DNA of 64,000 nt from Podarcis vaucheri (taxonomy: Eukaryota). Both the position numbers and the translations under genes were made by a program. This document shows, piece by piece, positions 24,901 to 27,900 of this stretch; positions within the stretch are counted from its first letter, which is position 1, and each line of letters opens with the position of its first letter. The DNA lies in assembly GCA_965113315.1 (NCBI GenBank), contig OZ220368.1; one strand, written 5' to 3'. Below the pieces are notes generated by a model, which was not told the DNA's origin, made no database searches, and saw only the letters and a program-made list of their open reading frames with translations.

Positions 24901-27900
24901 CATATAGTTGTCAAGCCTCTGCTTAAAGACCTCCAAAGTAGGAGACTCCACCACACTCCTTGGCAGCAAATTCCACTGTCAAACAGCTCTTACTGTCAGG
25001 AAGTTCTTCCTAATGTTTAGGTGGAATCTTCTTTCCTGTAGTTTGGATCCATTCTCCGTGTCCGCTTCTCTGGAGCAGCAGAAAACAACCTTTCTCCCTC
25101 CTCTATATGACATCCTTTTATATATTTGAACATGGCTATCATATCACCCCTTAACCTCCTCTTCTCCAGGCTAAACATGCCCAGCTCCCTCATAAGGCAT
25201 CGTTTCCAGGCCTTTGACCATTTTGGTTGCCCTCCTCTGGACACGTTCCAGTTTGTCAGTGTCCTTCTTGAACTGTGGTGCCCAGAACTGGAACAGATAC
25301 TTATACTTGTATGGACCTTATGCATGAACTGACTAGCGAATGAACTGATCCACTGGGCTTTCTGCTTTTTTCATTGAACTTTATGAGACTTCCGTTGAAA
25401 TCTACAATTTGATACAATGAATAGTATACCTTATTTATGCAAAAGTACAGCCGGTTACGTCTTGTGTGTTTATTGAGAATGTTTCACGTAACCATAGGGT
25501 TGTTGTTGTTGTTTTACCACTGGGTACCCAGCAGACCAATAGGATTCCTTCTCTTCTGAACTGCTTTTGATATCAGCATGCCTGGATATTCAGACCTCAG
25601 GAAATAAACATTGTTGCTCAATAACCCTAAAAGGACGCGCCTTACCTTGGGTTCCAGAAAGTAAGAATGGAGGCTCCACCAGCACCATGGCCCCTCTGGT
25701 TGTCGTGGTTATCTACAAAGACAATGGCTTTGTCAGAAGGCATCAAACTCCAGTTTTCTCCCCAGCGCCTAAATTGTGAAGAAATAATCAAAACTTTATT
25801 CACAATTCACTTCGGTGCAAACTACTGTTTATTTACCAGGTATATTTTTTTAGCCCACTGCTCATTACACGATCTCTGAGGGGGTGACAGCCAAACTGAA
25901 ACAAAAACCATTCCAAAACAAAAACTGTGTATCTGAAGAAGTGTGCATGCACACGAAAGCTCATACCAAGAACTAACTTAGTTGGTCTTTAAGGTGCTAC
26001 TGGAAGGAATTTTTTTATTTTGACTATGGCAGACCAACACGGCTACCTATCTGTAACTGGAACCATGGAAGGCACCACATTGAGCCGCATGAAATGGAAG
26101 AGGTATCTGAAGAAGTGTGCATGCACACGAAAGCTCATACCAAGAACTAACTTAGTTGGTCTTTAAGGTGCTACTGGAAGGAATTTTTTTATTTTGACTA
26201 TGACAGACCAACACGGCTACCTATCTGTAACAAAAACCATTCCAGACAGCTTAAGAGCAGCTTTAGAAGTTTAGTGAAGATGATGATAATGATGATAATG
26301 ATGAATTTGATTTATATACTGCCTTTTATCAAAAGATAAAACAAATTTTACAGAGCATAATAATAATAACATCATAAAAAGCACGATGATAGATAGCATA
26401 ATAAAAAATGATCATAATAATGGTCTGATAATCCCCACCTTTAACAGGCCAAAGATTATTTAATGGCCAAAGTCCTTGGAAAAGAGGAATGGTTTGCTTG
26501 GCACCTAAAGACTTCTCTGGGGAGAGCATTCCACAGTCGAGGAACCACCACAGAAAAGGCCAATTCTTATGTTCAGAGACAGTTTTTAGAAATAATTTTA
26601 TTATTTCTTGTTGGTGTCCTTGTTTCTCAATTTGATCCTTTTACATGGTTTTGTATGTTTTGCTGTATTCTATATGAAAGCACGTCGAAGTGCAAGTAGA
26701 TAAATAGGTACTGCTCCGGCGGGAAGGTAAACGGTGTTTCCATGCACTGCTCTGGTTTGCCAGAAGCGGCTTAGTCATGCTGGCCACATGACCCGGAAGC
26801 TGTACGCTGGCTCCCTCGGCCAGTAAAGCGAGATGAGCGCCGCAACCCCAGAGTCGGTCACGACTGGTCAGGAGTCTGGACCTCTCAGGGAGAGGGAACA
26901 TCGAGAAGGGCCTCAGGTGACAAGTACAGAGTCTGGGTTGGTTCTTATGGAGAGAAGTGGTTTTTACGTTATTGAGGTCCTGAGCTGCCTAAGAATTTAT
27001 AGGTCAACACCAGCACTTTGAATTGGACCTGGAAACTAACTGACAGCCAGTAAAGCCAGGTCAGGATTGGGGTTATAAAAGCACCCAGTATCTGTCATAA
27101 AACAGGTAATAAAATACTCAGAATTGCAGTGGCAGCTAATGCTCCATAACCTCTTGGGCAAATGGACCAAAATGCCAAAAGTGTTGGATCCATTTGGGTT
27201 TCCAGGGGGAAGAAATTCCAGTCAGGGAACCACTACACATGTTTGCATTTTTATTTTTTTAAAAAAGGTGGGGGGGATGAATAATCCTGTCCTTCCAATT
27301 ATAGGCTGAAAAGCACACCTGTGGCATTTCGTATACAAACCCCACTCCTGTTGTAGGCCATGACTGTATTACTGCGCTAGTGGGGGGGGGATCTGCAGTG
27401 TTTGGCTTCCATCTGCATGCAGTAGACCCCCTCTGCACCCCACCCTCAGTGTGTGGGCCCCTGGGCATGGATTGAGTCTTACTTTAAATTTGCCATCTTT
27501 TCTCCGTTCCATTTGCGGAGGACTGTCCCGAGTTCTGCGCCATATTTAAACTCAGTCACCCGGCCGTTTCTGAAGTATTCAGAGCTGTGGACCGCTTCAC
27601 CGCCCAAGTCAATTACCTGGAAAAAGCCGGGGAAAGACACAGAGAAAAGGGATACACGATATTGATTTCAATTTGCTGCAGAAACCAACATCACTGAGAG
27701 AAGGTAGGCTACGGCAGGAATAGTCGGCGAGCTGAACTAAGACGTAAATATCTTGTGGTACGTACTGTGTTACATCTAGTGGTATCAATTTCGACTTATC
27801 TCCAATATGACCAGAGAAATGGTTTCGGCTATTATGGCCATTACCTTATGGAGCTGGTTTCCTCTGGCCTCTAGCATCTTACACTTTTGAAGCGAGAACA

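What the first reader, a model, noticed from the sequence alone, without database searches (positions are those of the whole stretch)
25900..26244. Tandem hammerhead-ribozyme dimer delimiting a 174-nt retrozyme-like unit inside amylase B intron 5
Seen: two ~129-bp direct repeats differ by one base and are flanked by a 16-bp duplication (AACAAAAACCATTCCA). Each repeat opens with a minimal type I hammerhead layout: helix I (G)GTAT/ATAC(C), core CTGAAGA plus one extra A, helix II GTGTG-CATG-CACAC, GAAA, a self-complementary AGCT in place of helix III, and a UC cleavage site. Predicted cuts after 25962 and 26136 would release a 174-nt RNA that also has internal pairing (GTTGGTCT/AGACCAAC). There is no ORF. 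Established: Penelope-like elements carry minimal hammerheads with palindromic helix III that work best as dimers, and metazoan non-LTR retrozymes are short ribozyme-delimited tandem units that yield small circular RNAs. Inference: this is a very young, non-autonomous, self-cleaving retroelement of lizards, probably mobilised by a Penelope RT. It lies antisense to amylase B.
Basis: partly seen in the sequence, partly recalled or inferred. Interest (0 to 1): 0.82.

Follow-up and report, generated by a model that had tools for sequence, protein, structure and literature searches.

The report
Penelope-type hammerhead repeat, partial tandem insertion
The two hammerhead-ribozyme-like motifs are real, but they belong to a young partial-tandem insertion of a very abundant Penelope-type lizard retroelement end, a known kind, and public reads gave no sign of a 174-nt self-cleaved or circular RNA.

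Summary
Two 129-nt modules (25929-26057 and 26103-26231, one mismatch) are separated by a 45-nt spacer and flanked by a 16-bp target duplication. Each module opens with a minimal type-I hammerhead layout. That layout matches the published Penelope-like-element (PLE) "min-HHR" point by point, including the extra base after A9 and the palindromic 15.2-16.2 pair. No Rfam hammerhead model matches.

The retrozyme reading is only partly supported.
- The same module lies at 13679-13907 as a fold-back insertion with its own duplication. Direct and inverted ends are both typical of PLE insertions.
- In reads from two lizard species, summed module depth is about 10^5 times the unique flank. The spacer is 100-300 times rarer than the module. 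Most copies carry other letters upstream of the hammerhead.
- In two RNA-seq runs of a related species, reads lie on both strands inside unrelated transcripts. The spacer is almost absent, and no read ends pile up at the predicted cut.

My best reading is one recent PLE-mediated insertion of a PLE terminal cassette in partial tandem. A true low-copy 174-nt retrozyme family is not excluded, because the spacer is itself multi-copy.

First readers of this scan flagged many similar Penelope hammerheads elsewhere in this genome. PLE hammerheads (2014, 2024) and reptile non-LTR retrozymes (2026 preprint) are already published.

The parts
25900..25915 (.). Left target-site duplication AACAAAAACCATTCCA
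   Evidence: Identical 16-mer at 26229-26244.
25916..25928 (+). 13-nt filler at the 5' junction (AAACAAAAACTGT). Nine of its bases repeat the start of the duplication. The last 2-3 bases (GT/TGT) match what precedes the module at the second insertion and, for GT, in the family at large.
25929..26057 (+). Module copy 1 (129 nt): a minimal hammerhead followed by a 3' hairpin domain, ending ...CTATCTGTAAC.
   Evidence: 128/129 identical to copy 2. Positions 25931-26060 are 130/130 identical to 13804-13675.
25929..25966 (+). Hammerhead motif 1. Helix I GTAT/ATAC (4 bp); CTGAAGA 25933-25939; extra A 25940; helix II 25941-25954; GAAA 25955-25958; AGCT 25958-25961; predicted cut after C25962.
   Evidence: The layout fits the PLE min-HHR description in PMC4209133.
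26058..26102 (+). 45-nt spacer (TGGAACCATGG...GAAGAG). It is the natural continuation of the source RNA beyond the usual 3' end. It is either a PLE 'tail' or ORF-proximal sequence, or the rest of a 174-nt unit.
   Evidence: It occurs once in the window. In DNA contigs its summed depth is 14,000-33,000, against 1-5 million for the module and about 25-100 for the unique flank. In RNA it has 0-6 reads against about 400-800. The second insertion also continues CTGTAA-CTGG.
26103..26231 (+). Module copy 2 (129 nt). It carries a private change at 26203: A here, G in 91% of family depth.
26102..26141 (+). Hammerhead motif 2. Helix I GGTAT/ATACC (5 bp); CTGAAGA 26107-26113; extra A 26114; helix II 26115-26128; GAAA 26129-26132; AGCT 26132-26135; predicted cut after C26136.
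26229..26244 (.). Right target-site duplication. Its first three bases (AAC) are shared with the module end, giving microhomology at the primed junction.
13667..13678 (.). Second insertion: left target-site duplication AGGAAAAACCAG.
   Evidence: The same 12-mer lies at 13908-13919.
13679..13804 (-). Second insertion: the minus-strand module, complete to its 3' end (CTGTAA, then CTGG shared with the duplication). Its helix I 5' strand is cut away by the fold-back junction.
13813..13907 (+). Second insertion: the plus-strand module, starting TGTGTATC and truncated at its 3' side. It forms 90-bp perfect inverted arms with the minus copy (13715-13804 with 13818-13907).
13908..13919 (.). Second insertion: right target-site duplication.

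Best explanation
The 313-bp element (25916-26231) is one recent retrotransposition product of a Penelope-like-element (PLE) terminal cassette, laid down in the partial-tandem ('pseudo-LTR') form that PLE integration typically produces.

The cassette is the 129-nt module. It consists of a PLE-type minimal hammerhead followed by about 95 nt that folds into a hairpin and ends at the site where the PLE reverse transcriptase starts (...CTGTAAC).

Inferred sequence of events:
1. A PLE endonuclease nicked an A-rich target.
2. Reverse transcription was primed at the internal start site with 3-4 nt of microhomology.
3. It copied the module, then the 45 nt that lie downstream of the start site in the source RNA, then a second module.
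4. The template was either already more than one unit long, or the enzyme jumped from the 5' end of one RNA to a more distal start site on another.

The fold-back at 13679-13907 is a second, independent product of the same source.

The hammerhead is a family feature of the PLE RNA. If it cleaves at all, it needs a partner copy or the PLE protein. At this locus it lies antisense to amylase and does nothing to the host transcript.

What is shown: the anatomy, the target duplications, the abundance of the family, the rarity of the spacer, and the absence of RNA ends at the cut site. What is inferred: the enzyme, the order of events, and any catalysis.
For: 1. Every sequence feature of PLE min-HHRs is present: short helix I of 4-5 bp, CUGANGA, an unpaired base between 9 and 10.1, G10.1-C11.1, GAAA, palindromic 15.2-16.2, and UC (against PMC4209133). 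The Anolis Poseidon element has the same layout (ctgagga-t-gcctgcc...gggc-gaaa-cg-tc) at its pLTR/ORF junction (compared by eye).
2. The same module occurs in the window both as a direct partial tandem and as a fold-back, each with its own duplication. PMC4209133 reports paired min-HHRs about 100-700 bp apart on opposite strands, and PLE tandem or partial-tandem organisation is described in PMC11167929.
3. Both insertions end at CTGTAAC(TGG), 95 nt past the cut site. In Anolis Poseidon, reverse transcription starts internally 85-92 nt past the cut, and an optional 30-40-nt 'tail' lies between two start sites.
4. One search gives five observations:
- 12,177 and 17,465 contigs of two species carry the module.
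- Summed depth is 1-5 million over the module, 14,000-33,000 over the spacer, and about 25-100 over the unique flank.
- Depth falls from left to right across the spacer (141,000 to 14,500), as expected if most start sites are at CTGTAAC and fewer lie further downstream.
- Loose ends before 26103 give ...CTTCTGTTTCAGT rather than the spacer.
- Single contigs join the module end (26040-26063) directly to a module start or interior (26103, 26104, 26106, 26136, 26145, 26164, 26188), and others join opposite strands. Tandem and fold-back junctions are therefore variable.
5. RNA raw reads (X23, X24): both strands are covered about equally, 98% of reads run on into unrelated sequence, the spacer has 0-6 reads against about 400-800, and no place shows molecule ends piling up.
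6. Across the family the core is constant at the 5% level, apart from CpG-type changes at C11.1/G12 and C17>U.
Against: - No PLE reverse-transcriptase ORF lies in the window, and I could not link the module to an autonomous element.
- The spacer is itself multi-copy, at a few hundred single-copy equivalents. I could not see what follows it in the other copies, so a fixed 174-nt unit is not ruled out.
- The summed contig depths are not calibrated copy numbers.
- The RNA runs come from a related species (organism F), not the best DNA holder (organism A), and the library type may lose 174-nt or circular RNAs.
- Both insertions start at the same base (TGT|GTATC). That points to a defined RNA 5' end, which the model does not yet explain.
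Confidence: 0.68

Rival explanations
1. It is a genuine non-LTR retrozyme. A fixed 174-nt non-autonomous monomer (module plus spacer), derived from a PLE end, is transcribed as a multimer. The dimeric hammerheads cut it into 174-nt RNAs, a host ligase circularises them, and a PLE reverse transcriptase copies them back into the genome.
For: - Two complete hammerheads sit in consecutive units. That is the working definition of an 'active' non-LTR retrozyme in the 2026 preprint, which finds such elements in 4 of 5 reptile genomes with a mean consensus of 176 bp and derives them from PLE pLTRs.
- The spacer is multi-copy in two species, not unique to this locus.
- The left junction of the spacer is the natural continuation of the module.
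- There is a 13-16-bp duplication and GC is 0.43, as described for metazoan retrozymes.
Against: - There are only 1.8 units here, and Tandem Repeats Finder does not call them.
- The spacer is 100-300 times rarer than the module in DNA and is not enriched in RNA. No RNA ends lie at the cut site.
- Both insertions share one fixed 3' end, which fits a linear template with a defined start site better than rolling-circle copying.
- The 174-nt RNA folds no better than shuffles (z = 0.02). The double-hammerhead fold is about 20 kcal/mol above the minimum.
- Other tandem pairs in the genome lack the spacer.
Confidence: 0.2
2. The tandem arose after insertion. A solo PLE end was inserted, and a 174-bp local duplication (slippage or unequal crossing-over) made the second copy.
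For: The two copies differ at only one base. The 2026 preprint proposes local amplification of PLE ends as the route to retrozyme arrays.
Against: The duplication brackets the whole 1.8-mer, with the module's canonical 3' end abutting the right copy. The spacer is repeat-derived rather than local flank. A later duplication would have to start and stop exactly at the insertion boundaries. Partial tandems are the normal primary product of PLE integration.
Confidence: 0.07
3. The hammerhead resemblance is a chance feature of an unrelated short repeat and has no ribozyme ancestry.
For: No Rfam hammerhead model matches. No cleavage has been shown.
Against: All core positions and all four extra PLE-specific features are present. 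The descriptor finds 0 hits in 200 shuffles. The core is invariant at the 5% level across thousands of contigs, while the downstream part varies. Rfam models require a real helix III, which this class lacks by design.
Confidence: 0.05

Closest known systems
Minimal hammerheads of metazoan Penelope-like elements (Cervera & de la Pena 2014, PMC4209133)
   Same: Type-I layout without a real helix III. Short helix I of 4-5 bp. An unpaired base between A9 and G10.1. A G10.1-C11.1 pair. Palindromic 15.2-16.2. Massive dispersed copy number, mostly solo motifs, with some pairs on opposite strands or in tandem.
   Different: Helix II here is a perfect 14-nt palindrome (5 bp plus a CATG loop), which can pair between copies. 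I could not show a link to a reverse transcriptase / GIY-YIG ORF. That paper names turtle and snakes, not lizards.
Poseidon_Ac (PAc) of Anolis carolinensis (Frangieh et al. 2024, PMC11167929)
   Same: A lizard PLE with the same hammerhead layout at the pLTR/ORF junction. Reverse transcription starts internally about 85-92 nt past the cut (here the 3' end lies 95 nt past it). It has an optional 30-40-nt tail between two start sites (here a 45-nt spacer), tandem or partial-tandem copies and A/T-rich targets. No RNA-seq reads end at the cut site, and the ribozyme needs the PLE protein.
   Different: The sequences are not alignable beyond short stretches (by eye). In PAc the ORF starts in helix II and runs on. 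Here the ATG in loop II stops after 9 codons.
Metazoan non-LTR retrozymes (Cervera & de la Pena 2020, PMC7229834; Li, Clavereau & Pollet 2026, bioRxiv 10.64898/2026.07.22.740005)
   Same: Short ORF-less tandem units of about 170-400 nt, each with a type-I hammerhead. Larger target duplications and low GC. Dimer-dependent ribozymes in vertebrates. Derived from PLE pLTRs. Reptile consensus lengths average 176 bp.
   Different: There are only 1.8 units here. The unit is not shown to be fixed. There is no sign of monomer-length or circular RNA, and the spacer is far rarer than the module. This locus is intronic, whereas that preprint reports depletion from introns.
Double-hammerhead self-cleavage of newt satellite 2 and viroid-like RNAs (Forster et al. 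1988; Epstein & Gall 1987, as cited in PMC4209133)
   Same: A weak helix III means that two neighbouring motifs must pair through a palindromic segment to form active sites.
   Different: Those motifs keep a 1-3-bp helix III with a loop and have proven cleavage. Here only AGCU is available (4 bp in trans), and cleavage is untested.

Membership tests
PLE minimal hammerhead (min-HHR) | Core CUGANGA ... GAAA ... UH with helix I and helix II in type-I order | tested here: met
   Three complete motifs lie in the window (25933-25962, 26107-26136, 13820-13849), against 0 in 200 shuffles.
PLE minimal hammerhead (min-HHR) | Unpaired nucleotide between A9 and G10.1, and a G10.1-C11.1 pair | tested here: met
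   A25940 and A26114. G25941-C25954 and G26115-C26128. The criterion comes from PMC4209133.
PLE minimal hammerhead (min-HHR) | No helix III of its own; positions 15.2-16.2 palindromic so that two copies can pair | tested here: met
   AGCU at 25958-25961 and 26132-26135. The pairing geometry was checked.
PLE minimal hammerhead (min-HHR) | Located in the flanking repeat (pLTR) of an element that encodes a telomerase-like reverse transcriptase and a GIY-YIG endonuclease | not testable with these tools
   No such ORF lies in the window and the rest of the genome cannot be searched. First-reader notes on other windows report Penelope reverse-transcriptase ORFs flanked by hammerheads, but these are unchecked.
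PLE minimal hammerhead (min-HHR) | Self-cleavage at C17, as a dimer or with PLE protein | not testable with these tools
   This needs a transcription and cleavage assay. Indirectly, RNA reads show no ends at 26136/26137.
Non-LTR retrozyme | Tandem repeat with at least two consecutive units that each carry a complete hammerhead | tested here: met
   Two motifs lie 174 nt apart. There are only 1.8 units, and Tandem Repeats Finder does not report them.
Non-LTR retrozyme | The monomer is a fixed family unit that recurs at independent loci | tested here: inconclusive
   The spacer is multi-copy but 100-300 times rarer than the module. Most modules have other upstream letters, and other tandem junctions lack the spacer. 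The spacer-to-module junction could not be counted genome-wide.
Non-LTR retrozyme | Expressed as abundant monomer-length linear and circular RNA | tested here: not met
   In two RNA-seq raw-read runs of a related species, the spacer has 0-6 reads against about 400-800 on the module, no ends pile up, and 98% of reads continue into unrelated sequence. Caveats: a different species, unknown size selection, and only about 12% of each run was read.
Rfam hammerhead families (types I, II, III, HH9, HH10) | Match to the covariance model | tested here: not met
   No hammerhead hit at E up to 10 in either the 4-kb or the 325-nt search. This is expected for a motif without helix III.

The most novel reading that the evidence does not exclude
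The 129-131-nt module would be a discrete, currently active, extremely abundant parasite of lacertid Penelope elements. It would be a SINE-like cassette made only of a ribozyme plus the reverse-transcriptase recognition hairpin, with a defined RNA 5' end 2-3 nt before helix I. Its 174-nt tandem form would be a nascent retrozyme that is cut and circularised in some tissue. Its fold-back copies would be major ADAR substrates in lizard transcriptomes.
Probability: 0.15. Interest if true: 0.55.

Novelty: new member of a known kind. Interest (0 to 1): 0.3.

Why it matters
This gives a well-resolved example of how Penelope-type elements leave partial-tandem and fold-back ends carrying minimal hammerheads. 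Two fresh insertions in one window have intact target duplications and share the same 5' and 3' ends, which helps map the template RNA's ends and the reverse-transcription start in a lacertid PLE family. It also shows that an apparent ribozyme-delimited unit can be a by-product of integration rather than a replicating unit. That matters for counting retrozymes in vertebrate genomes. It does not change what is known about hammerheads or about amylase.

Tried and rejected
- Rfam searches on 4 kb and on the 325-nt element gave no hammerhead match, only chance lncRNA/snoRNA hits below threshold.
- Tandem Repeats Finder reported no 174-nt period.
- An exact-pattern scan of metagenome contigs for the helix II-to-cut 27-mer gave 0 hits.
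- A full-text paper search for five sequence fragments of the module gave 0 papers. A search for 'retrozyme + hammerhead + lizard' also gave 0 papers.
- A scan-notes look-up by sequence came back blank.
- The 'goes back 174' joint looked at first like evidence for tandem or circular junctions. I rejected it because its shorter side is at most 34 nt. That lies wholly inside the 38-nt stretch my reference contained twice (26020-26057 = 26194-26231).
- I considered reading the spacer as the start of a PLE ORF (ACCATGG, then [12 protein letters not shown]...). In this locus it runs only 33 codons, and by eye it does not resemble the Poseidon_Ac N-terminus. It is left open.
- I did not align the Poseidon_Ac sequence with a tool, because it has no session reference and would have had to be typed in.
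- The putative 3' splice site (CTTCTGTTTCAG) just before helix I in the family's upstream letters is noted but was not tested.
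Full report
**1. What is in the sequence**

The stretch 25900-26244 contains two 129-nt modules, 25929-26057 and 26103-26231. 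They differ at one base (G26029 versus A26203). A 45-nt spacer (26058-26102) separates them, which gives the 174-nt period.

The whole is bracketed by AACAAAAACCATTCCA at 25900-25915 and at 26229-26244. The first AAC of the right copy is also the last AAC of the module. A 13-nt filler (AAACAAAAACTGT, 25916-25928) sits at the 5' junction, and nine of its bases repeat the start of the duplication.

Each module opens with a two-helix hammerhead layout. In copy 2 this is:
- helix I, GGTAT (26102-26106) with ATACC (26137-26141);
- CTGAAGA, then one extra A;
- helix II, GTGTG-CATG-CACAC;
- GAAA, then AGCT, then C17 at 26136.

Copy 1 is the same except that helix I has 4 bp. RNAfold on the 49-mers returns exactly helix I plus helix II.

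A descriptor I wrote for this layout finds three sites in the window and none in 200 shuffles. The 30-nt core occurs four times against zero expected.

The element lies on the + strand inside the second of two tandem amylase paralogues, both on the minus strand. It sits between the exons at 27479-27619 and 25640-25773, about 130 nt upstream of the acceptor of the latter. 'Antisense in intron 5' is right.

**2. A second insertion in the same window**

The other two matches to the core lie at 13773-13849. A minus-strand module (13804 down to 13679) is complete to its 3' end. It is joined head-to-head to a plus-strand module (13813-13907) that is truncated on its 3' side. Together they form 90-bp perfect inverted arms. 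The pair is flanked by AGGAAAAACCAG at 13667-13678 and 13908-13919.

It is 130/130 identical to copy 1, including three bases beyond CTGTAAC (TGG), which match the start of the spacer. It lies in the intron between the first two conserved exon blocks of the other amylase paralogue.

So the same source produced one direct partial tandem and one fold-back. In both products the module 5' end is at the same place (TGT|GTATC), and the 3' ends lie within 4 nt of each other (…CTGTAAC against …CTGTAA(CTGG)).

**3. What kind of motif this is**

No Rfam hammerhead model matches, even at E up to 10 on the 325-nt stretch alone. That is expected, because the motif has no helix III of its own.

It does match, feature by feature, the 'min-HHR' that Cervera and de la Pena described in the flanking repeats of Penelope-like elements. 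Those features are a helix I of 4-5 bp, a long helix II, an unpaired nucleotide between 9 and 10.1, a conserved G10.1-C11.1 pair and a palindromic 15.2-16.2. Their copies are mostly solo, some pairs lie 100-700 bp apart on opposite strands, and in vitro activity is low and dimer-dependent (PMC4209133).

The Anolis Poseidon element has the same layout at its pLTR/ORF junction (read by eye). For that element Frangieh et al. (PMC11167929) showed four things:
- Reverse transcription starts internally, 85-92 nt past the hammerhead cut.
- An optional 30-40-nt 'tail' lies between two start sites.
- The ribozyme cleaves only with the PLE protein present.
- No RNA-seq reads begin or end at the cut.

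Here both insertions end 95 nt past the cut, and the spacer is 45 nt. The geometry is close.

**4. Genome-wide and RNA evidence**

I laid four runs on 26020-26300. The runs were DNA contigs of the best holder (X1, organism A), DNA contigs of a related species (X8, organism F) and two raw RNA-seq runs of organism F (X23, X24). The reference was one unit plus 38 nt of copy 1 and 69 nt of flank, so that tandem or circular joins would appear as joints.

*Abundance.* 12,177 contigs (X1) and 17,465 contigs (X8) carry pieces at least 90% similar. Summed depth is 1-5 million over 26103-26190, against about 25-100 over the unique flank. The tool warns that this is not a copy number, but the family is clearly very large and is present in both species.

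*Spacer.* Its depth falls from 141,000 at 26060-26069 to 14,500 at 26090-26099. That is 100-300 times below the module, but far above single copy. The left-to-right decline is what one expects if the spacer is what follows the module in the source RNA, with most reverse-transcription starts at CTGTAAC and fewer further downstream.

*Upstream context.* Loose ends before 26103 read ...CTTCTGTTTCAGT (agreement 0.81 in RNA). The usual sequence upstream of the hammerhead is therefore not the spacer.

*Other junctions.* Single contigs at single-copy depth join 26040-26063 directly to 26103, 26104, 26106, 26136, 26145, 26164 or 26188. Others join opposite strands. Tandem and fold-back pairs thus arise repeatedly, with variable junctions.

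*Conservation.* At the 5% threshold, no variant falls in CTGAAGA, the extra A, the 5' strand and loop of helix II, or AAAGCT. The exceptions are C26128>T (15%) and G26129>A (18%), which form a CpG, and C26136>T (25%, still a permitted H17). Downstream positions vary more: 30% at 26144, 47% at 26148 and 47% at 26163.

*RNA.* Reads cover both strands about equally. 98% of them continue into unrelated sequence. The spacer has 0-6 reads against about 400-800 on the module. The table of places where molecules begin or end is empty.

The 'goes back 174' joint is not evidence for anything. Its shorter side (at most 34 nt) lies within the segment my reference contained twice.

**5. Folding**

The 174-nt unit folds no better than shuffles (z = 0.02).

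In the 316-nt natural 1.8-mer, the two 14-nt helix II palindromes pair with each other with probability of about 1. The AGCU:AGCU helix has probability of about 0. Forcing the nested double-hammerhead fold costs about 20 kcal/mol relative to the minimum (-58.1 against -78.1).

Co-transcriptional folding could still trap the local hairpins, so this weakens the dimeric-cleavage idea but does not refute it.

**6. Interpretation**

The best reading is a single recent PLE-mediated insertion of a PLE terminal cassette in partial-tandem form. The target was nicked in an A-rich site. Synthesis was primed at the internal start site with 3-4 nt of microhomology (AAC here, CTGG at the other locus). It then ran through module, spacer and module. 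The template was either more than one unit long, or the enzyme jumped from an RNA 5' end to a distal start site.

The hammerhead is inherited from the PLE RNA. Nothing here shows that it cuts.

The main rival, a true low-copy 174-nt retrozyme, stays at about 0.2. The spacer is multi-copy, the locus meets the two-hammerhead working definition, and a 2026 preprint reports non-LTR retrozymes in 4 of 5 reptile genomes, with a mean consensus of 176 bp and an origin in PLE pLTRs. I could not count the spacer-to-module junction genome-wide, and that count is the decisive number.

**7. Novelty**

All of the following are already published: PLE minimal hammerheads (2014), the lizard Poseidon hammerhead and its internal reverse-transcription start (2024), metazoan non-LTR retrozymes (2020), and their presence in reptiles and derivation from PLEs (2026 preprint).

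First readers of this scan have also flagged many Penelope-type hammerhead tandems and fold-backs elsewhere in this genome, with periods of 165-166, 174 and 210 nt (unchecked notes).

This locus is therefore a new member of a known kind. It is clean and young, but ordinary.

**8. Limits**

- I had one read-laying run.
- The RNA came from a related species, and about 12% of each run was read.
- Contig depths are not calibrated.
- There was no access to the rest of the assembly or to a repeat library.
- The Poseidon comparison was made by eye, because the sequence has no session reference.

Noticed in passing
window 26138-26166 (reads): The RNA reads show strand-specific A>G-type changes that are nearly absent from DNA contigs of the same species. 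On + sense RNA: 26154 (112/376), 26165 (100/393), 26166 (58/390) and 26139 (41/312). On - sense RNA, seen as T>C: 26138 (47/379), 26148 (53/378), 26152 (42/370), 26153 (31/363) and 26164 (36/419). Both runs agree. This looks like ADAR A-to-I hyper-editing of double-stranded RNA formed by inverted copies of this repeat. The DNA and RNA are not from one individual.
   Followed up: partly
window 13679-13907: A fold-back insertion of the same module, with 90-bp perfect inverted arms and its own 12-bp duplication, lies in an intron of the first amylase paralogue. The host pre-mRNA would carry a long perfect hairpin plus one sense hammerhead that lacks most of helix I.
   Followed up: yes
window 25926-25933 and 13813-13820; loose ends at 26103: Both insertions begin at the same base (TGT|GTATC), which suggests a defined 5' end of the template RNA 2-3 nt before helix I. 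Family-wide, the letters before GTATC are ...CTTCTGTTTCAGT. That is a pyrimidine tract plus CAG placed exactly at the 5' end of helix I, which recalls the intron end at helix I in Drosophila virilis Penelope (PMC4209133). These letters can also pair with the CTGAAGAAG core.
   Followed up: no
window 25904-25911 and 13670-13677: The two target duplications share the 8-mer AAAAACCA, although the primed end is on opposite strands. The right duplication at 26229-26244 also resembles the RNA just 3' of the start site (AAC...AACCAT against AACTGGAACCATGG). This may be a target preference or annealing, but there are only two cases.
   Followed up: no
window 26163 and 26203: The predicted stem pair 26163:26203 in the 3' hairpin varies in a pairing-compatible way. 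Family-wide, 47% of depth has C at 26163 and 91% has G at 26203. Copy 1 has U.G and copy 2 has U-A. Linkage of the two sites within single copies could not be checked.
   Followed up: no
window about 6684-15301 and 21788-33782, minus strand: Two tandem alpha-amylase paralogues have conserved exon blocks of 71-85% nucleotide identity. Each carries an independent insertion of the same repeat.
   Followed up: partly
window 26275-26304: An (ATGATGATA)n / (TGA)n microsatellite lies 30 nt downstream of the insertion. It caused a spurious snoRNA R79 hit.
   Followed up: no
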